Positions 20,160-41,818 of a stretch of 64,000 nucleotides of DNA are shown here, one piece after another. Every line of letters begins with the position of its first letter. Position 1 is the stretch's first letter. This DNA is from Monocercomonoides exilis PA203 (taxonomy: Eukaryota; Protista; Preaxostyla): assembly GCA_001643675.2 (NCBI GenBank), contig LSRY02000025.1, positions 744,001 through 808,000 of the forward strand. Reading direction: 5' to 3'. The translations under genes and the position numbers were made by a program. Below the pieces are notes generated by a model, which worked only from the letters and a program-made list of their open reading frames with translations, ran no database searches and was not told the DNA's origin.

Positions 20160-20330
20160 GAATAATTATGATTTTTCAAATTTGAAAAAATTATGAAGGG
20201 ATTTCAAATTTCAAAAAATAATGAAAATGCATATTAAATTATTGAGTTTAGTAATATATAACACAAAAATTTTTTGGAATAACCCATATTTATTTTAGTC
20301 GTCTGGAATTAAAAATTGTTTTGTTTGAAA
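20160..20330. promoter_or_regulatory. 171-bp bidirectional promoter between the kinesin and MCM-BP
   Basis: Head-to-head ATGs at 20159 (-) and 20331 (+); contains the perfect palindrome TTTTTCAAATTTGAAAAA at 20172-20189. Confidence 0.55.
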
Positions 20331-22952
20331 ATGTCACAAATTTGGGATTTTTCTCAAATGAGATCTGCACTAGATGAAAGCATTGAAAAAGGAGAACGAT
20401 ATATAGATGAAATTACACTTAATTCAAAACAAGTTATCCTTAATTCATCTTCTCCTGAACATATGGCTGAAAACACAATCGTTCGCTTTAGATGTATGAT
20501 TCAAGACATGCAAACTCCAGACATATACCCAGATAGATATTATGAAGTAGATTCAAGCACTAAAGAAAAATTTTTAAGAAGTGGTCGTTACAGAAATATA
20601 CCTTTGTCATTCTCAGATCCTCAGAAAACACGAGATCCTAGCATTAAGTTTGGAACAGCAAGATCCTTATTTTGCGTCCCTGTTCCTGGAGAAAATTTAT
20701 GGATTTATCAAACATATCAACAACAATCATCTCATAACTCTCAAGATTCTCTTCCTCCGTTCACTGAATCTATACCTGACATGTACGCACCTTGCCAAAG
20801 TAAGACTGAAAAAAAATCTGCGGAGTCATTATTTACATTTCCATCATTTTTTTCTCTATATCCAGAACTTCGTCATCTTGTCTATCCCAATTATCAAGTA
20901 TTTGAAACTTCACTTCCATTTCCTCCAGAAAAACAAAACGGCAGAGAAAATTTATGGCCTCGGTTAACTTCTGCATGTGTTGTTCGGGCGTATGGAGATA
21001 TTGTTGAAAATCTTAGAGTTAACGATATTATTGATGTAGTTGGTATTTATCAATCAATGCCAAATGAATCTAAAGCAAGTGATTTTGTTTCACCATTTTA
21101 CCCTTCAAGAGGATCAAAACTATTTGCAAATGATTTTAAAGATGACAACAGTGAAGAAGAGAGCACAGAAGAGGATGATGAAGAACATTTTGTTGCAGGG
21201 CCAAAGCGAAAGAAGAACAAAAAAATCGAGAAAAATCGCATGCAAAGGTGCAAAGCTGATGAAGCTAATGATGGAAAAGAAAATGATGAATGCAATGAAG
21301 ACGATGAGTTTGTGGAAGATGGAGAAGATGGAGCAATGATGAGCGGGGATGCTGATCCATCTCTTGTTCCTCAAATACATGCACTTCGCATCATCACATG
21401 TTCGGCTCATCCCAAATATACATCAGAGTGGCTCAATATTGATGACGAAATCAATTGTTCTGCAAAACGTGCGAATGAGCTTGTTTCTACCAGAGAAAAT
21501 GATTCGGGAAAAATGGAAAAGGATGACAACGACGAAAATGATGAAACAGATGATTCAGAATTTGAAAAATCACCCAGTCGCCACAAAATTGCTCGTCTAT
21601 CTCATCCATCTGCTTTGCTTTTGGAAAGAGTGTGCCACTCAATGAAATTACTACATAAGCAAATGATCCCATTTATTGCTCAATGCACAGCTGGAGACAT
21701 AAACACTGCCGAGTATGTTTTGGGCACTCTCCTTTCTTCGGTGTTTTCAAGAAAAGAAATGATTCCATTTGGAAAATGCTCGTTGAATATCGTTATCCCA
21801 ACATTTCACCATCCAGAATTGGACCAATTTTTGCAAAGCCAAAAACCTGTTGATCCCACCATAGCTTCAAATACAACCGCTGCTGGTACAAAGCCAGCGT
21901 TGGACTTTTCATTCTCCTCCTTTGTTGCTTCAAAAATTTCATCTTCACTTTCAAGCCTTCTATCATTATTTACACCACTGAGTCATACACAGCATGTGTC
22001 TGCTGATTGGCTTTCGTCTGTTTCATTTTTACCAAAGCAACATCCATCAACAATGAGACTGTATTCGGGCTTTCTTCAGCTTCCAAGTGGATGTGCTATT
22101 TTGTTTGACGAAAGCAAAATTAGAGAAGGTTCATTGACATCAAAGGCTATCGATAATATTCGCGCTATCCAACGAGTAGTTGACGAGCAGCAGGCAGACT
22201 ATCAATTTGGCGCTGGGGTCACTTCATTTAATACAGACTATAGGATCTTCTTTGTTTCTGTGGGCCGTTCATTATTTAAGGCAGCTGATGTTATATGTGT
22301 TCTTGATCCTTCTCAGGACATGCTTTCTGGTCTTGTTAGAGAGTTTATTGCACAGCAGCATCAGACTTCAAAAGCAACAACAGATATTTATCAGTCATCA
22401 TTGCAAACAGATAATTTAGTCAGAGCAATTTCAAGTCAATCAGAAGAGCAACTGCAATCATCGCTTCAATTACCCGCACCAATTAATCGAGAAAGATGGC
22501 TTGTAGATGCACGAGAAGCCATTGAAGTTCTAAGAAGCAGCATATTGAGGATGGACAAGCCAGTTATGGATTATATTGAGAGAAGGCTCGTCGAACTTCG
22601 AACTGAAGAGAATATGTTCCATCAAAATGACTTTTCCCTTTTGCTGGCTCTTTCGCGTGTGGAATGCTTAAGCAGAGGGGAAAGCTGGATGAGCCGAGAA
22701 GGATTTGAAGCGATTGTTGAGCGTGAGAAGATAAGAAGAACAAGATTATTACAATACGAAGCGGCAATTAATGAAATGAAGCAGAAGAAATGGCTTGATG
22801 AAAATGAAGCAGCAGGAATGTCATATGAAGCAATGGAAGAGGAGAAAGAGATGCTTCAAGATGCAATGAAATCCGAAGAATTTGAGGTATACCGAGAAGA
22901 GGAAAGTGAAGATATGGAAGAGGAGGATCAGTTAAAAAGTGATAGCAGTTGA
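20331..22952 (+). CDS. MCMBP: Mini-chromosome maintenance complex-binding protein
   Basis: VRFRCMIQDM, LFCVPVPGENLW, LRVNDIIDVVGI, PSLVPQIHA, GDINTAEYVLGTLLSSV, LYSGFLQLPSG...FDESKIREGSL...NIRAIQRVV.EQQADYQF are characteristic MCM-BP blocks. First ATG is at 20331. Confidence 0.9.
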   Translation: MSQIWDFSQMRSALDESIEKGERYIDEITLNSKQVILNSSSPEHMAENTIVRFRCMIQDMQTPDIYPDRYYEVDSSTKEKFLRSGRYRNIPLSFSDPQKTRDPSIKFGTARSLFCVPVPGENLWIYQTYQQQSSHNSQDSLPPFTESIPDMYAPCQSKTEKKSAESLFTFPSFFSLYPELRHLVYPNYQVFETSLPFPPEKQNGRENLWPRLTSACVVRAYGDIVENLRVNDIIDVVGIYQSMPNESKASDFVSPFYPSRGSKLFANDFKDDNSEEESTEEDDEEHFVAGPKRKKNKKIEKNRMQRCKADEANDGKENDECNEDDEFVEDGEDGAMMSGDADPSLVPQIHALRIITCSAHPKYTSEWLNIDDEINCSAKRANELVSTRENDSGKMEKDDNDENDETDDSEFEKSPSRHKIARLSHPSALLLERVCHSMKLLHKQMIPFIAQCTAGDINTAEYVLGTLLSSVFSRKEMIPFGKCSLNIVIPTFHHPELDQFLQSQKPVDPTIASNTTAAGTKPALDFSFSSFVASKISSSLSSLLSLFTPLSHTQHVSADWLSSVSFLPKQHPSTMRLYSGFLQLPSGCAILFDESKIREGSLTSKAIDNIRAIQRVVDEQQADYQFGAGVTSFNTDYRIFFVSVGRSLFKAADVICVLDPSQDMLSGLVREFIAQQHQTSKATTDIYQSSLQTDNLVRAISSQSEEQLQSSLQLPAPINRERWLVDAREAIEVLRSSILRMDKPVMDYIERRLVELRTEENMFHQNDFSLLLALSRVECLSRGESWMSREGFEAIVEREKIRRTRLLQYEAAINEMKQKKWLDENEAAGMSYEAMEEEKEMLQDAMKSEEFEVYREEESEDMEEEDQLKSDSS

Positions 22953-26815: not shown

Positions 26816-27495
26816 AATTCAATTTGAAGACTTCAAAGAAAGTGGATCACAAATAAATACTTTCAGATTTAAAGAGTGAAAACAAATATCATCAAAGAAA
26901 ATAGAAAAAAAAGAAAAAGAACAATGAAAAAGGGAAATAAAATCATCATAGAAAAATTGAAGCTAAATTTATATTCCAAAAAATAAAAAGAGAGAGAGAA
27001 AGAGAGAAATCATAACCAATAAATCATAAATAAATAAATAATTTACAATATATAAAAGTTATGGAACTAACTGGAACTAACTGAAATGGAATAGAAGCTG
27101 AATAGAGAAGAATATTTCGTGTTCCTTTTATTTTTTTTTTTAAACCATTAGAAAAATTTTGCTAGTTCAAATGTTCTAACCCGAAAAATAATGCTGCTCT
27201 TCAAAAAGATGAATGATCTTAATTGTTATTTTCATTATTTTCTTCCTCTTTTGTATCTTTCAGAGAAATTTTTACCAATTAACTTTTGCCATTGAAATAG
27301 TTGAAACAAGCAGATTCCCAGATTTCTTCACATGCTTCTCTATTTGAAATGCCACATCACCTTTTCCTCTCCTTCACCGCTTTCATTCACTTCCCATCCT
27401 CTCCTCTTCTCTCAACCCCTTTCCCTTTTCTCCTCTTCTCCTCCTCCTCTTCTTCTTCATTCTCTTCTTCTTCATTCTCTTCCTTTTCCTTCTCC

Positions 27496-30400
27496 TTACC
27501 AGCAGTTAAACAGCGAGAACTGCTTTGGCGACTCATACTCCACAATCTCCACAAACACACACTTCTTCTTCACTGGCATAATCGCTCCATCTCCTCCTTG
27601 CCCTGTCTCAAAGGGATCGTTATACGCCCCAAGCATCACGTGGTTGTAGCTCATCTCCTCTTCCCTCCTCTCCTGCCATTCCTCCTGCCTCCGATGTGCT
27701 TCCGCCTCGCTGTCTGAATCGTCCTCGCTTTCTTCCCCTTTCCCTCCACAATTCGATTTTTCATCTCCATTTTCGTTTTCTTCTTCGTCGTTTTCGTCAT
27801 TGTAGATGTTTTCCTCATCTTGCTGCTGCTGTCTTAGAAGCTCTTCGATCTGTTCTTGTATCCTCTGCACTTCCTCTTCCACCTCGTTTTCTCCTTCTCC
27901 TCTTTCTTCTCTATCTTCTCCTTCTCCCCCTTCTCCCGCCTCTCCTTCTTCATTCCTCGCCTTTTCACTCATCATCCCCACTGCTTTCTTCTTCTCCTCT
28001 GCTGTCAACCTCTCTCTCCTCTCCCTCAGCTCCTTCACTTTCCCTTCCCTCTCCTTCCTCCTCACCTCCAGCTGCTCCAACCTCCTCATCACTTTCTCCC
28101 TCTGCCTTCTCAACCGCTTCCGATTGAACGTCAGCACAGCCCATGCGCCTTTATTCCCCACATGTCCGCAATAGTTAGGCGCAGAGAACACAGTGAGCAA
28201 CCTGTGCCCACACCCTGGCTGATACTCCCACCCGCCCATCTTCAGCTGATGTGATCTCAACACCACCTCCAGCCCATTCAGCTTGCAGAAGTCGTATGTG
28301 ATGTTCGGCCCAAACAGGTTTCCGGAACCTCTTTCAGAGGCATACAGGCCGTACTGGTCGTGAGGATCAGACCAGAGCAAAAGAGTGGTGAGATCTCCCT
28401 CAAGTGTCTGCGCAGACCGCTCAATCGACCGGATGTCATTGAGTGTTGCTTGAGGCGCAATACCGCCATGCACACAGAGCACTTTCCCTTCCACAAGAGC
28501 AGCCAGAGGAAGAGACGCAAACATACGGGAGAACGCTATGTATGTGTGCACGCCATACTTCTGCCGGATCTCCGTTGTGAATCCAAAGAGCGTGTTCAGC
28601 TCTGTTGCTTCGTGGTTGCCTCGCAGCAGTGTCAGTGCTCGTGGGTGTGCCAGCTTCAATGCCAGCACCACCGCCAGCACTTCTGCACTGCCTGTGCCTC
28701 TGTCGCAGTAATCGCCCATGAACACCATCGAATGCTCCTCCTCGCTCGGATAGCCTGTTTGTCTGAGCAGACAGCACAGATCTTCAAACTGGCCATGAAT
28801 ATCACCCACAACTGTGCACCGCCACTTCTTCTTCGGTTTGGCTTTGGACTTAACTTTCGAGTTGGACTTGGATTTTTGACTCTTCTTTTTCTTCCTTTGA
28901 GATAGCTTGCCTTTTCCTGATTTTGTGCTTCTTTTGCCCTTTCCTTGTTGGCTTTCTCCTTTTCTTCCTTTCTTCCCTTTCTTCTTCTTCTTCTTTCCCC
29001 CCATTCCTTCTGCTGTTTCACAGAACTCTGCATTCAAATCTCCTTCTTCTCCTTCTCCATTCCCTAATCCTTCACATCCTTCAAATTCTCCATCTGCTCT
29101 TTCTCCTTCTTCTCCTTCTCCTCCTTCTTCTCCTCCTTCTCCTCCACTTCTTCTGCTTCCTCTTCTGCTTCCTCTTCGCCTCGAATCTGGCCGGTTGCTG
29201 AACCTCTCTCTAGCAAATGCAAATGGCATATCTTCAATATCTCCTTCTTCATTCTCTTCGTTTTCTTCCTCTTCCCCTTCTCCTCTTTCTCTCTCCCCCA
29301 TTCCAAAGCGCTTGCGCCCATATCCTCCATGTTCTAGCCCATCCATGTTGCTGTATCTAATTTGATTGTCCTCGTCTTCTTCATCTTCTTCTTCGTCTTC
29401 CTCTTCGTCTTCTTCATCGTATTCTTCATCCTCATCTTCCTCATCATCCTCTTCTTCTCCTTCCCCTTCCTCTTCTTCATCTTCATTCTCTCCTTCCTCT
29501 TTCTTCTCTGCTCCTCCTTCATTTCCATCTTCATCTCCATTAGCATCAGATGAACCTTGCAATGGCTTTGGAACAGACTCGCTTCCCTTCTTCTCTTTCT
29601 TCTCTTTTTTATCTTTGCCATTCTCTTCCTCTTCATCTGCGTCTTCTTCCAAATCTGATAGTCTTCCTTTTCTCTGCTCTTCAATTTTCTCTCCTCCAAT
29701 CGATAGCTGAATGTCTGCATCTACCAGCACTGTTGCAAGAGCAGACACACCACTTTCGCTCTTTTTGCTTGTCTTCTTCTTTTCCTCTTTCTCTTCTTTT
29801 TCTTCCTTCTCTTCTTTTTCTTCCTTCTCTTTCTCTTCTTTCTCATTATCGTCCTCCTTCTTGTGTCTTTGTGTCTCGGGTGATGAAAATGCAGACTCTT
29901 CCCCAGACAATGGATGTGGATTCACCTCTTCTGCTTCCTCTTCTGCTTCTTTTCCCTTTGCACTTCCATTTCCTTCCTTTTCTTCTCCTTTTCTTTCTTT
30001 CTTCTCTTTCTCTTTCTTTCCTTCTATCCCTTCCTCCTCACTAGTCTCTGATGGTGTTCCTTCTCCTCCTCCTTCTCCTCCTTCTCCTCCATTCATCAAC
30101 ATCATCTGCTCTCCTTCATCTGAGCTCAGACTCGATATCAGTGGCGGTGTGGGTGTTGCTGTTGATCTTCCACTCGAATCGTCGTCAAATCCTTCTGTCG
30201 AAGGCGGCTGGTAATGCAAACCAGGCTGCTGGGGCTTTGGAGAGGAGACTGTTATCTGCTGCACAGGGATTGGGCGAGGCTCACTGGGAAGAAGAGAATG
30301 AGATGTGGATTGGGATGAGGGTTGAGATGAATTGGAATCAGAAGAAATGATGTTGTCAGTGGGTGTGAGGGGTTGAGGTGGTATATCGTGTTCTTTGTTG

Positions 30401-33400
30401 GAGTTATTATTATTGTTATTATTATTATTGGCAACAGAAGATGTTTCGCTGCCAGTGATGATGATGCTGGCTTTAGCTTTCTCTTTGGAATCTGCATCTT
30501 CTGTTTGATTGTTCTTCTCCTTCTCTTCTTCCTCTTCCTCTTCTTCCTCTCCTTTTCTCTCTCCTTTTCTAATCTGCTGCGTCTGTAACAGTTTTTGCTC
30601 CTTTTCTGCTTTCCTCTTCGCCTTCGCCTCCTCCTTCGCTTTCCTCTTCCTCTCCTTCTCCTTCTCCTTCGCCAGCTTCCTCTCCTTTCTCTGCCTCGCC
30701 TTCCATTCTTTCTTCTGCCTCAATCTTTCCTTCTCTTCCAGCTCTTTCCACTGCGCAAGTGCAAATGAACCGCATTTAGCACGTGTTATTTCGAGTGGGG
30801 GTTCTGGTGGGAACTGAGTGAGTTGGTCGAACATGAGGGGAGGGGAAGAAGGAGGAGAAGAGGAGGAGGAGAACGATGATAATGAAGAAGATGATGATGA
30901 GAAAGGAGGTGATAATGCTGTTGAGGGTTGTGTGAGTGAAGTGGAGTGTGTAAATGGTGAAATGGATGGAGCTACAAATGAATTGTTATTTGAATAAGAA
31001 GAGGAGGAGGAGGAAGAAAGCGAAGGAGAAGAGGAAGAAGAGAGTCTGAGATCGATTGTGAGAGGGGAGGTTGACAGAGAAGGGTAGCTGTGCACTGGGA
31101 ACTGTGAGGCAAAAGCGATCGTTCGAAACAGAGGAGGTGTGGCTGATTTTTCTGGGTGAGAAAAAGTTGGAGAAAGAAGTCTTTTGACACTGCTATTATT
31201 GTTATTGTTATTGTTACTTCCCTTTCGAATGTTATCACTCGATTCTTTCTCTCCATCTTTCTCTCCTTCTCCTTCTCCGCTTCTTTCATCTTCAGTCACA
31301 CCAAATGCATCTGATTGTGACAGAGGAGAATCTGCTGGATGCTTCAGGAAACCCTCTGGTGTACTGTCATTGTCTTTCTCATCATCTTTCTCTTTCTCTT
31401 TCTCTTTCTCTTCTCTTTCTCTCTTCTCTTTCTCCTCTTCCTCCATCTCATTGTTTGTCTTTGTCTGTCTGAAATGATCAATCCCAACATAATCATCAAC
31501 CGTGTCAAAGCAGATAGCATGCGACATCAATGCAACTTTTGTCGTTGGTTCCAACTGCCAATTCTCCAAAAGCAGCTCAAACGAATTCTTTTCGGGCTCT
31601 TTTGCTTTGGCTTTGCCTTTCTCTTTTGATTGAGTTTTTCCTTTTCCTTTCACTTTCCCTTTCACTTTCCCTTTCCCTTTCATTCCGTTCTTTCCCTTGC
31701 TTTTCTCTTGTTTTCCTGTGTTTTCTTCATTCTCTTCTTTTGTTCCTCTTCCATTCCCACTTGTTCTTCCTCCACTGCTCTTTCTCTTCCTCCTCAATCT
31801 CTTTCTCTCGTCCCTCTCCTTCTGCTTCTGCCTCTTCTCCTGCCTCGACAGCCCATCAATTGTCACTCCAAACATGTCTGCTTCTTTGATCTTTGCTTCT
31901 GTTATCCCACTCTTTTCCTTCGGCTTCCTCCGACCATGCTTGTTCTTGCGATGTCTTTTCTTTCTCTGTGTGTTCTCATTGTCTTCATTGTTATCATTTT
32001 CATTAGCATTTTCATCTTTCTCATTGTTATCATCCTTATCATCATCCTTTTCATCATCAACATGATGATGACTATGATTGTGATGCTCATGATGATGATG
32101 GTGATGCTTGCTGTGTATATGCTTATGATTGTGCATATTTCTGCCTGTGTTTGAGAGAGAGCGAGAACGATATTTCAAATGCTGCTTAGACGCATCAGCT
32201 GTATTGTCTGTTTGAGCATGCTTTGTGGAATTGTCATTAATATCATCATTAACATCATCATCATCATCATCTGGAGAAGAAGAAGAAGAAGAAGATGTTG
32301 ATGACACAGACGATATCGACATCGAAGGCGATGTCGACTGCATTTGCTGCTCTTGTTCGATTTCTCTTTCATCACCTGAATTCTTCTGCTCCGTCTCACT
32401 ACTCGATTGCTGCTCCGGTGTCTTGCTGTTATCTTCCTCTTTCCCTTTCTCTTTCCCTTCTTTCCCTTCCTCCTCAAACACATCTGGTGTTGCATCTGGT
32501 GTGATTTCTGAAGGAGCCTTCCTCAACTCTGGTGGCCCAGGCAAGAGTGAAAGCAGAGCCGCAATAGAATTCTCTTCTGCTTTCTTTCTGTGTGTTTTGC
32601 TTGCATTGCTTGCATTACTTTCTCCTTTGGCTTCATTTCTATCATTAGCTCCATCAACCCCATTCGCATTTTTATTTCCCTTGTCATTCTCATCTTTGCT
32701 GCTACTCTTACTCCCACTGCTGCTAATCAGCTGCCCATGCAGAAGATAGTCTGCTGCTCTCCCCTGTGGAGACAGAGACACAAAGCGACGCAGCATACGC
32801 TCCTTCATCTTTCTGCTGGAGGGCTTTGCAAAGGAAGAGGAAGAAGAGGAAGATGATGAAGAAGCATTCCCTTCACTTCCTTTCCCTTCTGCAATATCTG
32901 ACACAGAAGTATCCTTTGATGCTCCTTTATTTGAAGAAGAAGCACTTCTATTTTCACCAGACCCTTCTGCCTCCATCATCTCGCTCTGGATGAATGCCAT
33001 CAGATGAGAAGAAGCTGAGCTCGACGGCATTTGCGAGCGCGAACGAGCATTGCGATGGAGTCTGCTTGTTCTCCTGCTGTGCTTCGTGTAGTGATACCTG
33101 TGCCTCAGATAACTGTCGATTTTGGCTCTTCTGCTGAATTCATCATTCATTTCTCCACTTTCTTCTTCTTCATCACTTTCTTCTTCTCCTTCTCCTTCTC
33201 CTTTTGCTGTTATTGTTGATTTAATCTTTTCAGATGATCGAAGGAGGAACGGGAATTTATGCTTGTGCAATGGACATTTGCATTTGGGGCAGATTTTGAG
33301 TGGAGTTTTCGCTGGAAAAGAAGAAGATGATGAAGATGACTTTTCTGTTTTGTCCTTTCCGTCTTTTTGATTTTCTTCTGTGTTAACTTTACTGTTAATA

Positions 33401-36400
33401 ATTGTTCCATCTTTTTCTTTCTTTTTATCGCTTTCTCCTTCTCCTTCTTTAATATCAATCTCCTGCTCCTTCTTCAGCACTTCTGGCATTGAATTAACTG
33501 GCCCTGTCGATCTTCCTCTTCTTCTCTGTTGTTTGTGTCCTTCTCCTTCTCCTTCTCCTTCTCCTCCTTCTTTTCCCTTCTCCTCCTTCTCTTCTTCTTC
33601 TTCTTCTTCTTTTCCTTCTTTTCCTTCTTTTCCTTCCCCAGACTCATTCACTGAGCTCGATGCACTTCTTCCTCCTCTTCCGCTTCCTCTCCCTCTTCTC
33701 CACCCTCTTCCTCTGTCTCTCTCTCCTCTCCTCTGCTGATACACCTCTTTCATCACTCCTTTCTCTTCCTTTTTGCTGTCGTCTTCCTCCTCCTCCTCTT
33801 CTTCTTCTTCTTTTGCAGCTTCTGCCTTCTCTTTGTTGTCATCTTCTTCTTTTGATTCTTCTTCAGATTCTTCACTTTCTTCCTCCTCCTCCTCTTCTTC
33901 ATCTTCCTCCTCTTCTTCTTCTTCTTCACTCTCATCTGTCTCACTCTCTTCTTCTCCTTCACTTTCATCAACATCAACATCATCTTCTCCTTCTCCTTCT
34001 CCCTCTTCTGAATCAGTCTGTGACATTTCTGAACAGCTGCTGCCTGATAGGAATGAACCCGTATCCGAGTCAGTCATTGAATCTGTGCCACTATTCGAAT
34101 CACTTTCTTCTCTTTCTCTTTCTCCTTCTCCTTCTCCATTCCTTTTCTCCTTCTCCTTCTCATCTCCTTCACTTCTCCTCCTCCTCCTCATTCTCCTTCT
34201 ATTTCTTTGATTCTTCTCACTTCTATTTTGACTCACACTTCTGCTTTGACTTCGACTTGGGCTTCGGCTGATGCTCCCTCTCTCTTCTGTCCCACTCCAC
34301 TTCACTGAACAAAAACTCGAATCACTTCCAGAATCTGAAGATACCTCATCCTCTTCTCTGTAATTCTTATTCTCCTTGTTATCTTTGTTATCTTTGTTAT
34401 CCTTGTTATTCTTCTTCTCTTGTCTTCCTCCTTCTTTTCCTCCTTCTTTTCCTCCTTGCTTAGCCAATCTCTGAGCCTTCGGTGAGTATGCATCGACTAT
34501 CTCCTGGTAATGCACTTTCTCTGGAATGTGGCACTCACAATTGCATCCACACACACACCTATAAACATGCTCTTTCTTCTTTCTGCTGCTTTTTTCTTTC
34601 TCTTTCTCTTTGCCCTTTTCCGATTTGGGTTTTGTTATTAAAACGATGTCTTTATGTTTAACATTCTCTATTTCCTCTGTTATTTCCTGGTTATTCTCTT
34701 CACTTTGCCCATCTTTTGTTGTCTTCTCTGAAATGTCTTCTTCGTTTTCACTGCTTTTCTTCTTATTCTCTCCTTCTTCTCCTTCTCCCTCATTCATCAT
34801 TTCATCCTTCAGCTCTATCGAATCATCCAATTCACTTCTCCATCTGATCTTTGTTTCTTCTTCCCCTTCTTCTTTCTCTTTCTTTGCATCTTTCTCTTCT
34901 CCATCTTTTTCTTTCCCCTCAAAACTATAAGGCGAATAATCTGTCGGTTCACTCTCATTTTTGATATTTTGTTCGTCTTCTTTTTGATCTTTGTCCATTT
35001 CTCCATCTCCTTCTCCTTTCATCTTGTCACCTTCATTACTTTCATCCATTCCTTTCCCTTCTCCTTCTCTTTCCTCTCCTTCTCCATCTCTCTCTCCTTC
35101 TCCTTCTCCTTCTTCCTCCTCCTCCACATCTGCCTTTAACACTCTCGTCTGCCCGTTCGGCTCCCTCACCAGCATCGGCTTCGTCCTGTGCGGCTGGGCA
35201 CCTATGTGGAACACAAACTCCATCGTGCCCAGCTCCAACTCCTGCCTCACCGCCAGCTCTGAGGGCGGAGGCGACATCGCAGGCGAAGGGGAATTCCGCA
35301 GGGAACTTGCTGCATTCGGGTCGTTGCTGTTTGCTCCGCCTGGCCCGCTCATATCGCCTGTACCTTCGCCATTGGCTCCCAGCCCATCGAAGCCAGTCAA
35401 GGAAGCAGAGTGGTTGGAGAGCTCGGACAAACCTGGGGAGTGCGCCGGAGAAATAGACGGAGAAAAAGCAGGAGAGAGAGAAAGACCGGGGAGACACCCG
35501 AGGCTTCCGTCGTCGGTTGGATCGGTCACGTCTACGAGGGTGGGCTCTTGTGAAAAGAGATAAGTGGAACGCTCCAAGAGATGGAGAATAAGTCTAATTT
35601 GGACAAAATGTGGTATTGAAAGGGAGGGTGAGGAGGATTGCAATTAGAAAAATAGTAATGAAAGATATATATTTTTGAGTTTGAGTTTATTAATCAGATG
35701 GCATTAAAATATAAACAGAAAAAAAATATGAAACACACCTTAATGGCAGATACGAATTTGGCTGACCGTTCAAATAATCAATCATTTCATCTACAAATGC
35801 ATCTGTTACAGGCTCATCCTCTTCCAATCTGGGTCCTGTGTATCCCAGAGGGTATTTAATTGTTCTCCAATCTGGAATCAAAGGCCTTGTTTCATTTCCA
35901 TCAGTTAATGATTGAAGGAGATTAAATTCTGCAATTGCAGCTTGGCACATTTTCATTCTTTCCTTAACTACTCGACTTTCTGGTGCAAGATACAAAACTT
36001 TTCTGAATTCAATTTGCATTTTCAAACAAAAAATTCGAAATCTGTTTAGAAGAATTAACAAATTAATAATTATCACCTAAAATCTTGTAACGATTCTGTA
36101 AAATGTCGAAGATCTAATAATTTTGAATCAAAACTTAAAAATAAATTAAATTAATAAAATAATTGACGAACAATAATGTGCAACTCCTCTTCTATAATAA
36201 GCCTATTAAAAATGAAATGAAATTGTCAAAATTACGCACATAATAAAAAGAAATTTTATAAAATACCTTCACATAGTCTGGATCTAATTCAACAGCATAG
36301 TCTGCATCTTCAAGGGCTCTTTGATAGTTTTCCATTCGCTGATAAGCGAAAGAACGATTTGAATAAAGGACTGTAAGTTCAAAAGGAGGTGCTTTATTTT

Positions 36401-36582
36401 CCTGTAGAATATCAATGGCTCTTGTATATCTGTCGATTGCGTCCAAGTAATTATAATCTTAGCAACATGTTAATTTAATTCAAAAATACAATAAATGTTA
36501 TAAAATGGCAAAATATGCACGTACTCAGAAAGAGAGTATTCCCTTCGAGCTTTAATTTTTCTGGATCTTCGCCTTTCTCCAT
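27496..36582 (-). CDS. PPP5C: Ser/Thr protein phosphatase 5 (TPR + PPP domain) with giant low-complexity insertions, ~2,900 aa; five small 5' exons, then one 8.1-kb exon (35593-27496)
   Basis: TPR: KLEGNTLF..Y.DAIDRYTRAI, LYSNRSFAY, ALEDADYAVELDPDYVK|AYYRRG; PP5 linker YTGPRLE...VTDAFVDEMIDY; catalytic motifs GDIHGQ, GDYCDRG, RGNHE, HGG, LWSDP, RSH, SAPNYC, GNKGA. Confidence 0.9.
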
Positions 36583-36796
36583 TAGTCAAAATGATGTGTT
36601 GTGGATCTTAAGCAGTCCGACCAAAAAAGAAAGGCTTTTGAAAATTCTTCTTTTTATTATAGTTTTAGTGGGCATGATCAATAATAATAATTTTGTTATG
36701 CATATTGATCAAACTATTTAAATTTTTTCAAGGGATAGATAACGTTTATAATAAAAATTAACGTATTGCATATTCAAATTTTTTATTTTCTAGTGA

Positions 36797-39700
36797 ATGG
36801 AGCAACCAAGTTCTGTTTCATCGAAATATGACGCCATTCTATCTGCTTTAAGTTGTGTTGTTAATTCAACTGTACCAGTAAATAATCATCTTTTGAAGTC
36901 CTCAAATTCGCCAATAGAAGATAAATGCATGCAGCTTCTTCAAGCAGCAGAGAGAGGGCAATCTCTTTCTGAAAGTGAAACAAGTATTCCAAAATTAGCT
37001 ATTCCTTCGGCTTCAAAGCCTCAAATACATCCAGCACTTCAATTCCAAGAAGATCGTAATGTTGTGGATACATTTGCGTTTTACAACTTGCCTAGCGTAT
37101 CGCTTCTGTCATCTTCATCTCGCATTTCATCACGTTCATCTATTGCGTCTTCAAGAATAAGTTCAGACGAGCAAAATCGATCAAAGCCTGATGAAGAAAT
37201 AGAAGATTCTGAATCCGAAAAAACAAGTTCGAGAAAGTCTTCAATTCATCCTTTTGAAACCAATGTTTCAGATGGAAAGCATGAAAACAATGAAAATGTT
37301 CAAATTCAGCAAACAGAACAAAATAAAAGATTGGCGAATGCATCATCACCTTCTCCTCAGCCATATTCACCGACTGCTGAATTTGCAAAAATTGTTTTAA
37401 ATCAGATGTCAAAGAAAGCCCAATTTTTGAATCAACCGAGAAGATCTCATGAGCAAGTTAAAATTCAACCTCTGAGCATGATAGGTGTTGAATCGCCTTC
37501 AGCTTCTTCCACAGCACAATATCCTAAGCAACCTATCTCTTCTTTTGTTGGGACAGCGCTTTCTCCAGCTGCATTTTCAAGCACGCATCATTTTGGCTCT
37601 TCTCCACACACTCCGACTGAAACATTTTCATATTCAAGCTTATCACCTTCATCTCAATCAGTCATTCCAGCTTTGAATGGCTCGTATTTGAATCAAACAA
37701 CTCGGTCTTCAAATATGCCTTTGATTCCATCTTTGCCGTTTGTTTCAACTGAAGCCTCACAAAAGCGAATTTTTTCATTTCCTGAATCATACACGCCTCT
37801 TTTCTCTACGACATCAAAAGAAGAACAAGCTCGATCACTCACTCCAGAGCAACTGCACAAAATCTATCCATCTGCACTCACATCCTCAAGCCCACTTCTT
37901 CAAACAGAGAAGCAACAAGGTCAGAGTTTGCTTTCGCAATCAGAACAATCAACTCCAACGCTCAATCCTGTTTTTTCTCCACATGAGCATCTGTCTACTG
38001 TTTCTCCTCGAGTTATATCTGACTCATCTCACATGGCAAGTGATACTTTATCAATTCACTCTTTTGACGCTCCAATGGACATCGAACAGTTTCCGTCTGC
38101 CCTTTCAGCGCGTTCTGTTTCTCGTCCGAATACGAAAGATCTTCCAGCTTCTCATGATTCTTTTCCGCTTTCGACAAATGCACTGAAGCAAACGACTGAA
38201 GATAATAAGACTTTCACTAATCCGAATCAACTTGAAAAAGCTTCAACTTTGCCTTTCTCATTTGATCAGCAATTAGAAGCACAAGCACCTCTTATTCAGA
38301 TGCCTTTCAATAATGCAATGCACACTTTATTTCAAGATCCAATGGAGTTGCATAATGAGATTTCTGCACCTTTCTTGATGAACTCACAAAACACTGCAAT
38401 GCCATTAAGCCACATTTTCGATCAAACTCCAATTTCTATTCCAATGCAAATGCCTTATGCTGTTGCATTGGATCATCCAAGAGAACAAACGGAATTCACT
38501 TCTTCTTTTGCAGATGAAGGAGATGAAAGCTACGAAGATGAAAATGGAGGAGAGACAAGCAAACAAAATGTTTCAAAAGCAAATAAAAGAGGATTTCAAC
38601 AATCATCTGGCATTGCAAATCCTTCTTTTGCTTCTTCCTTACCTTCAAAACGAAAACGTAATGATCTGGAATCATCAACCACAAAGAGATCAGACAATAA
38701 ATCAGAAGAGAACATCCAAACAGCAAAGAAGAAGAAGAAGAAAGGGAAGAAGAAGAAGGAAGCGCGGAAGGAACAGCTGAAACAGCTTTTGCAGATGAAA
38801 GAGATTCTGTCTGATCTTGTCGATCTATCTGCAGCACAGCCAATTAGCTCTTCAACAGCACGCTCTGATTTTTCATCAACTCAAACTGCCCCGCCTTCTT
38901 CTCTTCCACTTTCGCTTTCGCTTCCGCCGCCTCCTCAGCCTCCTCCTTTTTCTCTTTTTTCATCGAATCCTTCATTCCCTTTTGCTGGTCAGTTGCAACA
39001 GCCTGTGAGTCAACTTGTACAAAGCAATGCTTCAAATCCACAGCCGTCAAACACAAACAATGAAACAAATATTAAACAGGCAGATCCAAATCAAACAGCA
39101 ACTGCAAATATGCCGCACCTTCACTTCGAATTGTTGCGCCGTACAATTGACGAGCAAAGTCCTTCTTCGTTTCATGTGCAATTATCTCCACAAAATGATA
39201 AAATGGCATCAAGAAAGGATAGCAACAATTTGAATCAGAATGAAAAAACAGAAAATTATAAGCAAAACACAGAGACTATTGTTAGCGAATTCAAGGCTGG
39301 TAATTCAAACAACAAAGAAGCCAAAACGAAAAATATTCTAAAAAGTTCTGAAGAATTGGAAAAGAGAGAATCAGAAAAAGTGAATGATGAAAAAAAATTC
39401 GATGAAAAGAAAGTTGAAAAGATTTCCCCTTCTTCTTCGCCAGAAGTATCAGAGCGTTCTTTTTCTGCTGATTCCTCGAGTAGTCAGAGAGATGCGTCAC
39501 ATAACTCAGATAAATCAACAGCTCATTCAAAACGCTCGTCAGAAAGAGAGCCTCCCTTGCAGAATGAAAAGGGGGTGAGGAAGAAAAGTCAAGGTACAAA
39601 AAATGAAATAAACGAAAAAGAGAGGAAAAGCAAGTCAAATAAAGAAGGATTGACCAAAAAAGAAGATGAAAATAGAAAACAGATTCCAAAGAAAAAATCA

Positions 39701-41818
39701 AGAGATGACATTGGAATTCGTCATCATTGCCCCTGTCTTGAACACGGAACAAGGCCAAAGCATTCCTTCGTACCACAAACGGAGCGTCAGCCTGAACATA
39801 ACAGAAAGCGAGAGAGAAGAATAAGGGCATATGATTTGCAAGAAGGAGATTTTGATCCTAAATTAGATCGAATAGAAGATGGGATAATGACAACGAGCAG
39901 AATTAGACAGCAGCCCTATCACTCTCACAGACATCATCGTCATTCATCATCAGCATCATCATCGTTATGTTCTTCTCATTCTCTTCATTCTTATCGTTCA
40001 TTATCTTCGCAATCTTCAGTTGAAAGTCTTCAATCTTCACTAAGTCAGGAAACTTCAGCATCTCATTCAACCACATCTCATTCTTATTCATATGCATCTT
40101 CATCGTCGCAAATGAGACCAGATGCTTTCTCCGCAGAGAAAGGAGCACATTTCCACGGTCATTATAACCCTAACCACCATCTGCATAATCACCATTTAGA
40201 GCACAATACTTCTTGGCAGCATCGTCAGTCTCGACCGTATTCTCATGCACTTTCTGAAAAAATGTCAGGTTATCATCAAATTAGCCCAAATGTAGCAGAA
40301 GATAATATCACTAGTAAGCCAACAATTCATCCTCCAACATTAATCTCATCGAGTTCTACTTCAAACAATGCATCAGATTCTGATCCTCTATCCATTTCCA
40401 TTTCTTCTTCAAAGCACTCTTCGTCTCCAACTATTGATCATTCTCATGTGTTGTATAAAAATATCCCTTCTCTTCTTCCTTCTTCCCCGCTCTTCACACG
40501 TAGCGATATTGAATGTCCAAAGAAAACCCCGTCGCTTATTCCTTTGATTCAGACATCAGACGAAAAGGAGCTTAGAGACAAGAAAAAGGAGGAAAAGAGA
40601 AAGAAGCCAGAAATTTTTGAAGAAAAGAGAGAAAATGATTACAATTCTCGAAAAGATTCAGAAGCCTCTCGATTTGCAAATGTGGCAAAAGAAGAAGTTG
40701 AAAAGAATGGAAACAAAAAAGAAGCTGGGCCAATTGAGGAAGAATATCAAACAGGAAGAAAAATGAAAGAAAAGAAAATCAGTGGTTTAGTCTATGCAAT
40801 TTCAAAAGAGGACGAAGAAGGAAGGAAAGAAGAAGGAAAGGATGAGATTGATGCTGAGGAACAAGAAGAAGAAGAAGAAGAATGGGAGATAGATTACGTT
40901 CTTAAAGATTCACAAGAAACAACATCAGAAAATCCAGAGTTGAGAATTCAATCGAACATTGATTCAGATAAAGCAGTTAGCGAACACAGAAAAGCAAAGA
41001 TGCAATTTCCGGACAAATCACAAAAGCTGCTTTGTGGAAATGAGGCTTCGCAATTAATACTCTCAAAACCAGAAATAGAAGGATTAATGCAGCAAATGCC
41101 TGGTAATGAGACAGGAACTGTTTCAAAGAAAGAAGTAACACAAAATTTCGCTTTGAGTGAAAACGAATCAGATGATGCTATTAATAAAAGCAATGCTCGT
41201 ATTTCCGAGAATGAAAATGACATCAAGAAAGAAGAGTCGCCTCCATTTTCGTCTCGTGTTCCTTCTTTTGCTCGCAAGCAGCCAGATGATTCAAGAATGT
41301 TGAACTCTTCCAAGTCATCTTCTGCAACTTCTTCTTTTGCTTCATCATCATCTTCTTCTTCTTCCAAAAACACATCGTTTCCTGATTTTGCTTTTTCAAT
41401 GAAGGAAATCGAAAAATCCAACAAATCTTTACAACCGCCCTACATTCATTCCTCGAATACGGTTGGTTTGCCCTCTTTCACTCAGCAGCCGCCTCTTCCA
41501 CACCATCGCCACAATCAACCTACCAATCATATAGAAAGCGCATCTGTTAGTCTGGAAAAGCCTTTATCTTCAAGCAATACTCAATTTTCAGTGGAAAATT
41601 TTCACTCACCTTCAAGTTATGGATCATTGGATCTTTCGCTTTCTACATCCTCTTTTTCTCCGAGATCATCTTTTTGGAGTCTCGATGTTCAAAGAGAAGC
41701 GTTGAGAAAGACTTCTGAAACAAAAGATAACACGGAGCATGATGTTGATAGCCAACCAGAAACTCCGCCTGCAACACCTCTATCGCTAAGCTCAAACGAT
41801 ATTGAAGATATTATTTAG
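36797..41818 (+). CDS. Uncharacterised, predominantly disordered Ser/Pro/Gln- and K/E-rich protein (1673 aa), divergent from PP5 (214 bp between ATGs)
   Basis: 5-kb uninterrupted ORF; basic NLS-like tracts (PSKRKR, KKKKKKGKKKK); no recognised domain. Confidence 0.75.
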   Translation: MEQPSSVSSKYDAILSALSCVVNSTVPVNNHLLKSSNSPIEDKCMQLLQAAERGQSLSESETSIPKLAIPSASKPQIHPALQFQEDRNVVDTFAFYNLPSVSLLSSSSRISSRSSIASSRISSDEQNRSKPDEEIEDSESEKTSSRKSSIHPFETNVSDGKHENNENVQIQQTEQNKRLANASSPSPQPYSPTAEFAKIVLNQMSKKAQFLNQPRRSHEQVKIQPLSMIGVESPSASSTAQYPKQPISSFVGTALSPAAFSSTHHFGSSPHTPTETFSYSSLSPSSQSVIPALNGSYLNQTTRSSNMPLIPSLPFVSTEASQKRIFSFPESYTPLFSTTSKEEQARSLTPEQLHKIYPSALTSSSPLLQTEKQQGQSLLSQSEQSTPTLNPVFSPHEHLSTVSPRVISDSSHMASDTLSIHSFDAPMDIEQFPSALSARSVSRPNTKDLPASHDSFPLSTNALKQTTEDNKTFTNPNQLEKASTLPFSFDQQLEAQAPLIQMPFNNAMHTLFQDPMELHNEISAPFLMNSQNTAMPLSHIFDQTPISIPMQMPYAVALDHPREQTEFTSSFADEGDESYEDENGGETSKQNVSKANKRGFQQSSGIANPSFASSLPSKRKRNDLESSTTKRSDNKSEENIQTAKKKKKKGKKKKEARKEQLKQLLQMKEILSDLVDLSAAQPISSSTARSDFSSTQTAPPSSLPLSLSLPPPPQPPPFSLFSSNPSFPFAGQLQQPVSQLVQSNASNPQPSNTNNETNIKQADPNQTATANMPHLHFELLRRTIDEQSPSSFHVQLSPQNDKMASRKDSNNLNQNEKTENYKQNTETIVSEFKAGNSNNKEAKTKNILKSSEELEKRESEKVNDEKKFDEKKVEKISPSSSPEVSERSFSADSSSSQRDASHNSDKSTAHSKRSSEREPPLQNEKGVRKKSQGTKNEINEKERKSKSNKEGLTKKEDENRKQIPKKKSRDDIGIRHHCPCLEHGTRPKHSFVPQTERQPEHNRKRERRIRAYDLQEGDFDPKLDRIEDGIMTTSRIRQQPYHSHRHHRHSSSASSSLCSSHSLHSYRSLSSQSSVESLQSSLSQETSASHSTTSHSYSYASSSSQMRPDAFSAEKGAHFHGHYNPNHHLHNHHLEHNTSWQHRQSRPYSHALSEKMSGYHQISPNVAEDNITSKPTIHPPTLISSSSTSNNASDSDPLSISISSSKHSSSPTIDHSHVLYKNIPSLLPSSPLFTRSDIECPKKTPSLIPLIQTSDEKELRDKKKEEKRKKPEIFEEKRENDYNSRKDSEASRFANVAKEEVEKNGNKKEAGPIEEEYQTGRKMKEKKISGLVYAISKEDEEGRKEEGKDEIDAEEQEEEEEEWEIDYVLKDSQETTSENPELRIQSNIDSDKAVSEHRKAKMQFPDKSQKLLCGNEASQLILSKPEIEGLMQQMPGNETGTVSKKEVTQNFALSENESDDAINKSNARISENENDIKKEESPPFSSRVPSFARKQPDDSRMLNSSKSSSATSSFASSSSSSSSKNTSFPDFAFSMKEIEKSNKSLQPPYIHSSNTVGLPSFTQQPPLPHHRHNQPTNHIESASVSLEKPLSSSNTQFSVENFHSPSSYGSLDLSLSTSSFSPRSSFWSLDVQREALRKTSETKDNTEHDVDSQPETPPATPLSLSSNDIEDII

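What the first reader, a model, noticed from the sequence alone, without database searches (positions are those of the whole stretch)
28825..35526. ~2,230-codon low-complexity insertion inside the PP5 catalytic domain
Seen: between EPTLVDV (ends ~35527) and WRCTVVGDIHGQ (starts 28824) lie 6,702 nt of stop-free in-frame sequence with poly-E, poly-S, K/R, poly-H and poly-N tracts and small Cys/His clusters (YRCVCGCNCECH, ICPKCKCPLHKH). Established: in canonical PP5 these two motifs are joined by a loop of under ~10 residues. The metal-binding and catalytic motifs downstream are intact (GDIHGQ, GDYCDRG, RGNHE, HGG, RSH). Inference: a ~500-aa enzyme has become ~2,900 aa through a huge disordered polyampholyte loop separating the autoinhibitory TPR unit from the phosphatase. 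It may act as a scaffold or condensate former, or be excised at RNA or protein level.
Basis: partly seen in the sequence, partly recalled or inferred. Interest (0 to 1): 0.8.

Follow-up and report, generated by a model that had tools for sequence, protein, structure and literature searches.

The report
Giant loop inside a PP5-like phosphatase
A second, PP5-like protein phosphatase gene of the mitochondrion-less protist Monocercomonoides exilis carries a real, coding 2,234-residue, mostly disordered loop in the first hairpin of its catalytic domain; the loop is shared in shorter form with a related cockroach-gut flagellate, and it is one more example of this genome's habit of splitting enzyme domains with huge insertions.

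Summary
On the minus strand, 6,702 stop-free in-frame bases (28825-35526) lie between EPTLVDV and WRCTVVGDIHGQ, and all catalytic motifs are intact.

By assembly size and contig count the genome is Monocercomonoides exilis. My six-exon model, checked exon by exon, gives 2,892 aa.

- **Paralog, not the PP5:** a canonical short PP5 lies on contig C38. It has a 6-residue loop at this site.
- **The insert is old and coding:** two Blattamonas nauphoetae proteins (1,296 and 1,077 aa) carry 660- and 540-aa inserts at the same site. Four anchor motifs inside them lie in the same order as here.
- **How it grew:** the M. exilis insert grew mainly in the spacers, through E/K/G/S-rich repeats whose period is mostly a multiple of three.
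- **Predicted structure:** AlphaFold2 gives a confident PP5-type core and a disordered insert, except for a charged helix of about 83 residues after one island.
- **Against an intron:** the gene's real introns are 58-145 nt at 14-28% GC. Four RNA runs hold 42-57% of the sampled words, more than the other exons can supply.

Direct read laying failed, so transcript continuity is inferred. The scan has already reported giant loops in other PPP genes of this genome, on other DNA. I checked one such locus.

The parts
36525..36582 (-). Exon 1: ATG at 36582, start of TPR repeat 1
   Evidence: Sequence read; GT donor at 36524. The 19 aa map to P0002 residues 8-17.
36267..36457 (-). Exon 2: TPR repeats
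   Evidence: Pfam TPR_2 E 1.6e-7 and TPR_1 E 1.2e-5. Maps to P0002 residues 21-83.
36172..36202 (-). Exon 3 (AYYRRGVAHY)
   Evidence: Maps to P0002 residues 84-92. Flanking introns run GT..AG.
36077..36113 (-). Exon 4 (LRHFTESLQDF)
   Evidence: Maps to P0002 residues 95-105.
35739..36002 (-). Exon 5: end of TPR unit and the PP5-type linker region
   Evidence: Pfam PPP5 (PF08321) E 6.8e-5, 23.4 bits against a cut-off of 23.5. Maps to P0002 residues 107-182.
27496..35593 (-). Exon 6: 8,098 nt including the stop codon. It holds the first strand, the insert, the catalytic core, a second insert and the C-terminal tail.
   Evidence: Open frame. Acceptor AG at 35595-35594. The six exon lengths sum to 8,679 nt, a multiple of 3.
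35527..35593 (-). Last helix and first strand of the catalytic domain, ending in EPTLVDV
   Evidence: Aligns to P0002 residues 203-224. The matching stretch of P0127 is strand 165-168 with pLDDT 77-97.
28825..35526 (-). In-frame insert of 2,234 codons
   Evidence: No Pfam family except Metallophos in the whole ORF. 37 of 44 tandem-repeat rows have a period that is a multiple of 3. The modelled part is mostly pLDDT < 50.
35266..35292 (-). Island A (SPSPAMSPP)
   Evidence: SPAMSPP in P0002 at 285 and SPAQSPS in P0127 at 252.
31471..31587 (-). Island B (hydrophobic stretch ending in VGIDH)
   Evidence: BLASTP E 1e-6 to P0002 residues 569-604. Three-way alignment has 8 invariant columns.
30511..30795 (-). 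Island C (CGSF....W) followed by an E/R/K-rich helix of about 83 residues
   Evidence: CGSF and W are invariant in all three proteins. The helix has pLDDT 88-97 in the M. exilis model and 86-88 in the P0127 model.
28126..28824 (-). PPP catalytic core, from WRCTVVGDIHGQ to AWAVLTF
   Evidence: Pfam Metallophos E 1.9e-29. PP5 structures match at E about 4e-57. 64% and 48% identity to P0002 in two blocks. pLDDT about 90.
27568..28125 (-). Second insert, about 186 aa, E/R/K-rich and mostly helical in the model
   Evidence: Helices 992-1048 and 1068-1107. Shorter inserts sit at the same place in the C38 PP5 and in P0002.
27499..27567 (-). Conserved C-terminal tail (VFVEIVEY...LF); stop codon at 27496-27498
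   Evidence: Weak alignment to the P0002 C-terminus. Low pLDDT.

Best explanation
The locus is one six-exon gene of Monocercomonoides exilis. It encodes a roughly 2,892-aa paralog of protein phosphatase 5: a TPR unit, the PP5-type linker and a PPP catalytic domain.

A 2,234-residue insert is transcribed and translated as a loop between the first two strands of the catalytic fold. A second loop of about 186 residues sits before the last strand. The loop was already present in the common ancestor of Monocercomonoides and Blattamonas, probably a few hundred residues long. It carries four anchor motifs and a charged helix.

In M. exilis the spacers between these anchors then grew, by slippage of codon-phased repeats, into E/K/G/S-rich disordered sequence. 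Because the two ends of the loop are neighbouring strands, the core can still fold and the phosphatase is probably active.

Shown: the open frame, the gene model by homology, the shared site and shared islands, the canonical paralog, and the predicted disorder and helix. Inferred: that the whole loop is in the mature mRNA and protein, that the enzyme is active, and that the conserved islands serve as docking or targeting motifs held on a flexible tether.
For: - **Open frame:** 2,715 codons, with 0 stops in the insert against 44-180 in the other five frames.
- **Gene model:** five GT..AG introns of 58-145 nt at 14-28% GC. Exon lengths sum to a multiple of 3. Every exon maps in order onto Blattamonas P0002.
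- **Composition:** the insert has 37-57% GC, unlike the introns.
- **Shared site:** P0002 and P0127 of Blattamonas nauphoetae carry 663- and 543-aa inserts between the same two strands.
- **Shared islands:** the four anchor motifs lie in the same order (first strand, A, B, C, second strand). Positions are 33/120/1386/1624/2274 here, 218/285/601/716/890 in P0002 and 162/252/393/493/713 in P0127.
- **Canonical PP5 in both species:** C38 in M. exilis and P0232 in Blattamonas. In the tree the three insert-bearing proteins group together (SH-aLRT 90), and C38 groups with P0232 (96).
- **Structure models:** the core has pLDDT above 90 with PP5 structures as best matches. In the M. exilis piece the core is confident, 721 of 1,199 residues are below 50, and helix 113-195 scores 88-97.
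- **RNA:** four RNA runs of one study hold 0.42-0.57 of the sampled words of 27400-36900. Everything outside the insert makes up at most about 30% of that stretch.
Against: - No read or cDNA was laid on the locus.
- The RNA libraries may contain pre-mRNA or DNA. If they are those of the 2025 culture study, they are rRNA-depleted total RNA.
- No protein fragment from transcript assemblies was found in the protein collection.
- Neither the word search (259 aa only) nor the length-free representative search returned a protein identical to this M. exilis gene. I therefore could not see how the annotators modelled it.
- Only two species carry the paralog, so conservation of the short islands rests on three sequences.
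- Activity and folding are predictions.
Confidence: 0.8

Rival explanations
1. The insert, or most of it, is removed from the mature mRNA as a very large in-frame intron or exitron. The cell would then make a protein of near-normal size.
For: A GT follows the codons of EPTLVDV (GAC|GTGACC), and AG dinucleotides lie just before the TGG of WRCT. No transcript was laid on the locus.
Against: - A spliced-out intron has no reason to stay open for 2,234 codons or to keep protein-level islands in the same order as in Blattamonas.
- Known introns of this gene are 58-145 nt at 14-28% GC, while the insert is 6.7 kb at 37-57% GC.
- The RNA runs hold more of the stretch than the other exons can supply.
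- The Blattamonas gene models keep their inserts in the coding sequence.
Confidence: 0.07
2. The frame is translated but gives more than one product. Internal transcription or translation starts, or proteolysis in the disordered loop, would yield a separate TPR fragment and a separate phosphatase fragment. The giant single chain would then not be the working form.
For: Long disordered loops are protease-sensitive (general knowledge). The two halves could reassemble, because the cut would lie in a hairpin loop. Nothing here measures protein size.
Against: No internal promoter or start evidence was found. The islands and the long helix are conserved, which argues that the loop itself matters.
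Confidence: 0.08
3. The region is an assembly artefact that joins a TPR gene, a low-complexity gene and a phosphatase gene.
For: The assembly is built from nanopore reads and the region is repeat-rich.
Against: The same order (TPR, first strand, islands A-C, second strand, core) is found in two proteins of an independently assembled genome. The frame is unbroken over 8.1 kb, and RNA contigs share words across the stretch.
Confidence: 0.02

Closest known systems
Canonical protein phosphatase 5 (PPP5C / Ppt1), including the organism's own copy on contig C38
   Same: N-terminal TPR unit, PP5-type linker, and a PPP catalytic domain with the GDxHG, GDxxDRG, GNHE, HGG, RxH and SAPNYC motifs. PP5 structures are the best-matching natural PPP subfamily by sequence, and they are the best fold matches for the model of the Blattamonas relative P0127.
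   Different: 2,234 residues between the first two strands, where C38 has 6. A 186-residue insert before the last strand. A long branch in the tree. The C-terminal helix that helps autoinhibition in PP5 was not recognised.
Blattamonas nauphoetae KAK2952072.1 (P0002, 1,296 aa) and KAK2946212.1 (P0127, 1,077 aa)
   Same: Same architecture, same insertion site and the same four anchor motifs in the same order. The first half of the catalytic core is 62-64% identical.
   Different: Their inserts are 3-4 times shorter and S/P-rich (19-25% charged against 41% here). They carry an extra conserved insert after HGG that M. exilis lacks. Their automatic names (PP2A catalytic subunit; phosphatase with EF-hands) do not fit the TPR-PP5 architecture.
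Other PPP genes of M. exilis split by giant in-frame loops (scan notes s1-468383, s1-464231, s1-471595)
   Same: Same genome and same superfamily, with kilobase-scale open loops and retained catalytic motifs. I confirmed one such locus, G000:C33:130400-138000.
   Different: There the loop lies between GNHE and HGG, which is a different site. Those genes have no TPR unit and are only 38-49% identical over short stretches.
Low-complexity insertions inside enzymes of Plasmodium, Dictyostelium and other protists (from general knowledge; not tested here)
   Same: Codon-phased repeat expansions tolerated in surface loops of conserved folds.
   Different: The scale differs: the insert is about five times the size of the host enzyme. 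It also holds conserved islands and a long charged helix.
ER/K single alpha-helix linkers, as in myosin VI and X and caldesmon (from general knowledge)
   Same: About 83 residues of alternating E and R/K, predicted as one helix with pLDDT 88-97.
   Different: Here the helix lies inside a loop of a catalytic domain. A stable single helix was not tested.

Membership tests
PP5 / PPP5 subfamily of PPP phosphatases | N-terminal TPR domain | tested here: met
   Exon 2 matches TPR_2 at E 1.6e-7 (31.4 bits, cut-off 27). Exons 1-5 map in order onto the P0002 N-terminus, and that N-terminus aligns to PP5 structures 5jjt and 1wao over residues 6-199 at E about 1e-21.
PP5 / PPP5 subfamily of PPP phosphatases | PP5-specific linker region (Pfam PF08321) between the TPR unit and the core | tested here: inconclusive
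   Exon 5 scores E 6.8e-5 and 23.4 bits, just under the curated cut-off of 23.5.
PP5 / PPP5 subfamily of PPP phosphatases | PPP catalytic domain with all metal-binding and catalytic motifs | tested here: met
   Metallophos E 1.9e-29. The invariant G, D, H, N, R and H columns are shared with 31 relatives.
PP5 / PPP5 subfamily of PPP phosphatases | Core closer to PP5 than to PP1, PP2A, PP2B or PPEF | tested here: inconclusive
   - PP5 structures match at 3.9e-57, PP2A at 5.7e-53 and PP1 at about 2.5e-48. The top hit, an engineered calcineurin chain, is raised by two matched stretches.
- Many of the closest representatives carry a PP5-type TPR N-terminus: 41 of the proteins fetched match the P0002 N-terminus.
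- In the quick tree the non-PP5 rows sit apart, but rooting failed and several rows were poorly cut.
PP5 / PPP5 subfamily of PPP phosphatases | C-terminal helix that locks the TPR unit onto the active site | tested here: inconclusive
   The tail is conserved with Blattamonas but has low pLDDT.
PP5 / PPP5 subfamily of PPP phosphatases | Phosphatase activity, and activation by Hsp90 or fatty acids | not testable with these tools
   The residues that I recall as the carboxylate clamp (K, N, N, K, R) appear to be present in exons 1-3 by eye. This rests on memory, not on a test.
Spliceosomal intron | Short, AT-rich, GT..AG and not constrained to stay open, as in the five introns of this gene | tested here: not met
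   The insert is 6.7 kb at 37-57% GC with 0 in-frame stops and conserved protein islands.
Intein | Hint domain with Cys/Ser/Thr at the start and His-Asn plus a nucleophile at the end | tested here: not met
   No Hint family was found in the Pfam scan of the whole ORF. The insert starts TDPTDD and ends PKKK before W.

The most novel reading that the evidence does not exclude
The loop may be a conserved regulatory module rather than tolerated junk. Oxymonads would then have duplicated PP5 and turned one copy into a tethered phosphatase. Its docking motifs (islands A-C, with a basic, possibly nuclear-targeting helix) would ride on an elastic disordered loop that leaves and re-enters the catalytic fold at one hairpin. 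Together with the other split PPP, dual-specificity and 5-phosphatase domains noted in this genome, M. exilis would be a natural experiment showing that folds tolerate loops several times their own size.
Probability: 0.3. Interest if true: 0.65.

Novelty: new variant of a known kind. Interest (0 to 1): 0.5.

Why it matters
This is a natural case of a roughly 470-residue enzyme scaffold carrying about 2,400 extra residues at two loop sites with every catalytic motif intact. It bears on how much insertion a fold tolerates and on how disordered regions grow.

Three graded versions of the loop (540, 660 and 2,234 aa) with fixed anchor motifs show where it grows and what stays constrained. A normal PP5 in the same cell provides a built-in control for experiments.

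It also corrects the automatic names of two Blattamonas proteins. And it shows that M. exilis has two PP5-type genes, which matters for reading its chaperone and signalling repertoire.

Tried and rejected
- **Transcript-derived fragments in the protein collection.** Two searches over the 5' junction, with 400-aa and 130-aa queries, were blank. A blank here says little.
- **The M. exilis protein itself.** It appeared neither in the word search (length window 710-2,259 aa) nor in the representative search.
- **More orthologs in metagenome contigs.** A scan with the paralog-specific alignment found only generic PPPs at 31-58% identity in the best segment; none looked like an ortholog.
- **Literature.** There is no mention of PP5, phosphatases of this kind or low-complexity inserts in the M. 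exilis or Preaxostyla genome papers. No supplements were held.
- **Zinc-binding role for the two Cys/His clusters.** They have no counterpart in Blattamonas.
- **Genes on the opposite strand.** These are only 150-200 aa mirror ORFs of the purine-rich coding strand.
- **Intein, intron and misassembly.** See the rival explanations and the membership tests.
- **The tree.** The outgroup slices were poor and the rooting failed. I use only the two local groupings.
- **Spliced model.** It was never joined or searched as one sequence. Exons were handled one by one, by reference.
Full report
**What is there**

Translation of the minus strand and the ORF list show one open frame at 27496..35643, 2,715 codons long. 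fixes EPTLVDV at 35547-35527 and WRCTVVGDIHGQ at 28824-28789. The insert between them is exactly 2,234 codons (35526-28825).

The insert has no stop in its own frame. The other two sense frames have 57 and 180 stops, and the antisense frames have 44-70. Pfam finds only Metallophos in the whole ORF, at residues 2277-2468.

**Organism**

The window lies in an assembly of 82,301,135 bases in 101 contigs. This matches the nanopore assembly of Monocercomonoides exilis PA203, which has 101 contigs and about 82.3 Mbp (PMC8767320). The closest proteins found are from the oxymonad Blattamonas nauphoetae, which fits that identification.

**Gene model**

Upstream of the big frame I read five small exons. 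On the minus strand the exons are:

| Exon | Coordinates |
|---|---|
| 1 | 36582-36525 |
| 2 | 36457-36267 |
| 3 | 36202-36172 |
| 4 | 36113-36077 |
| 5 | 36002-35739 |
| 6 | 35593-27496 |

- All five introns run GT..AG, are 58-145 nt long and have 14-28% GC.
- The exon lengths sum to 8,679 nt, which is 2,892 codons plus a stop.
- Each exon, translated on its own, maps in order onto Blattamonas P0002: residues 8-17, 21-83, 84-92, 95-105, 107-182 and 203-232.
- Exon 2 is a TPR repeat, and exon 5 matches the PP5 linker family at its threshold.

The exons were handled one by one, by reference.

**Relatives decide the question**

The word search, using the C-terminal piece as query, found Blattamonas P0002 (1,296 aa, TPR plus Metallophos). 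The representative search added P0127 (1,077 aa). Both are from Blattamonas nauphoetae (KAK2952072.1 and KAK2946212.1).

Both read EP..(I/L)DL, then 663 or 543 residues, then W(R/K).TV(V/I)GD. The insert therefore sits at the same site in both.

Four anchor motifs lie inside the inserts, in the same order in all three proteins:

| Landmark | M. exilis ORF | P0002 | P0127 |
|---|---|---|---|
| End of first strand | 33 | 218 | 162 |
| SPAMSPP-type motif (island A) | 120 | 285 | 252 |
| (V/I)GID(D/H) (island B) | 1386 | 601 | 393 |
| CGSF (island C) | 1624 | 716 | 493 |
| Second strand | 2274 | 890 | 713 |

- BLASTP gives E 5e-12 for the first block and E 1e-6 for island B.
- The three-way alignments show invariant H, F, D and GID columns in island B, and invariant CGSF and W in island C.
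- The spacers are what differ. A to B is 1,266, 316 and 141 residues, and C to the second strand is 650, 174 and 220.
- The M. exilis spacers are E/K/G/S-rich (41% charged, net charge -153). The Blattamonas inserts are S/P-rich (19-25% charged).
- Tandem Repeats Finder gives 44 rows in the region, and 37 have a period that is a multiple of three.

My reading is an old loop with conserved anchors whose spacers expanded in M. exilis by codon-phased slippage.

**It is a paralog**

Searching the organism's own genome with the Blattamonas N-terminus found a second TPR-plus-PPP gene on contig C38. Its catalytic part was already the second-best hit to the core. Its translation reads EPNLVTV, then PLTRRG, then VTVVGDTHGQ, which is a canonical 6-residue loop. 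It carries only small E/K inserts.

Blattamonas also has a 512-aa canonical PP5, P0232. In a quick tree the three insert-bearing proteins group together (SH-aLRT 90), and C38 groups with P0232 (96). The rest of that tree is poorly rooted and I do not use it. The duplication therefore predates the split of the two genera.

**Structure**

- An AlphaFold2 model of P0127, built with an alignment of 46 sequences, has pLDDT above 90 for the linker helices, the first strand (165-168) and the core (711-843 and 920-1073).
- In that model nearly all of the insert is below 50, except a helix at 498-520 (pLDDT 86-88) directly after CGSF.
- Its best PDB matches are PP5 catalytic domains (E about 5e-24, TM by target about 0.7).
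- A model of the M. exilis piece 27499-31095 gives a confident core. In it, 721 of 1,199 residues are below 50.
- The same model has one uninterrupted helix at residues 113-195 with pLDDT 88-97. This is the E/R/K-rich stretch after island C (window 30759-30511).
- The second insert is predicted as long helices of moderate confidence.
- By sequence, the core matches PP5 structures at E about 4e-57, ahead of PP2A and PP1.

**Is the insert in the RNA?**

What remains is indirect.

Four RNA runs of one study hold 0.42-0.57 of the sampled words of 27400-36900. Everything in that stretch outside the insert adds up to at most about 30% of it. At least a fifth to two fifths of the insert's words must therefore be present in RNA contigs.

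These may be the rRNA-depleted total-RNA libraries of the 2025 culture study, so pre-mRNA cannot be excluded. Together with the open frame, the coding-like composition and the conserved islands, I put retention and translation at about 0.8-0.9.

**Context in this genome**

One search shows further PPP matches inside open frames of 3,492-8,292 aa. I cut out one of them, G000:C33:130400-138000. It is open for all 7.6 kb, has GDIHG, GDYVDRG and GNHE at local residues 174-243, and has HGG only at residue 2250.

Earlier notes of this scan describe such split PPP domains, as well as split dual-specificity and 5-phosphatase domains. The present case is thus one instance of a genome-wide habit, and the scan has seen the kind before on other DNA. 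It differs in four ways. It belongs to a different PPP subfamily. Its insertion site is different. It has cross-species anchors, and a canonical twin exists in the same cell.

**Mechanism and limits**

The loop leaves and re-enters the fold at neighbouring strands. That these two strands form a hairpin in PPP structures is from my knowledge of PP1 and PP5 structures. The models only show strands on both sides. The TPR unit therefore need not be separated from the core.

I infer an active phosphatase whose loop acts as a flexible tether carrying short docking or targeting motifs and a stiff charged helix. None of this is tested. The flagged Cys/His clusters are not conserved.

Noticed in passing
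G000:C38, about 318900-321100 (L014): Canonical PP5 gene of M. exilis. It has a normal 6-residue loop at the site of the giant insert. It carries a roughly 45-aa E/K-rich insert before VLCVHGG and a roughly 60-aa insert before the last strand, which is the same second site as in the giant paralog.
   Followed up: partly
G000:C33:130400-138000 (L061): Another PPP gene, open for 7.6 kb, with GNHE and HGG about 2,000 residues apart. One search lists more PPP hits inside open frames of 3,492-8,292 aa on C28, C22, C47 and C12.
   Followed up: partly
P0002 residues 1013-1095 and P0127 residues 836-935: Both Blattamonas paralogs share a conserved insert of about 80-100 aa after HGG (PPPPSF..LPE and PL(F/Y)YRNP). 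M. exilis lacks it.
   Followed up: no
window 36583-36796: Only about 215 nt separate the ATG of the PP5 paralog (minus strand) from the ATG of a 1,673-aa ORF on the plus strand (36797-41818) that has no Pfam match. This looks like a head-to-head gene pair.
   Followed up: no
window 20316-22949 (+): An MCM-binding protein whose Pfam match is broken into four stretches in an 878-aa frame. It is probably also interrupted by inserts.
   Followed up: no
window 7001-14845 (-) and 51559-54579 (-): Giant open frames (2,615 and 1,007 aa) that end in Tyr/Ser-Thr kinase domains. They are members of the expanded kinase family described for this genome.
   Followed up: no
window 28126-28824 versus 28825-35526: GC at third codon positions is 0.61 in the catalytic core but 0.39 in the insert. 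The first 500 nt of the insert, which are conserved with Blattamonas, are 57% GC. The repeat-rich spacers therefore differ from the conserved parts in codon composition.
   Followed up: partly
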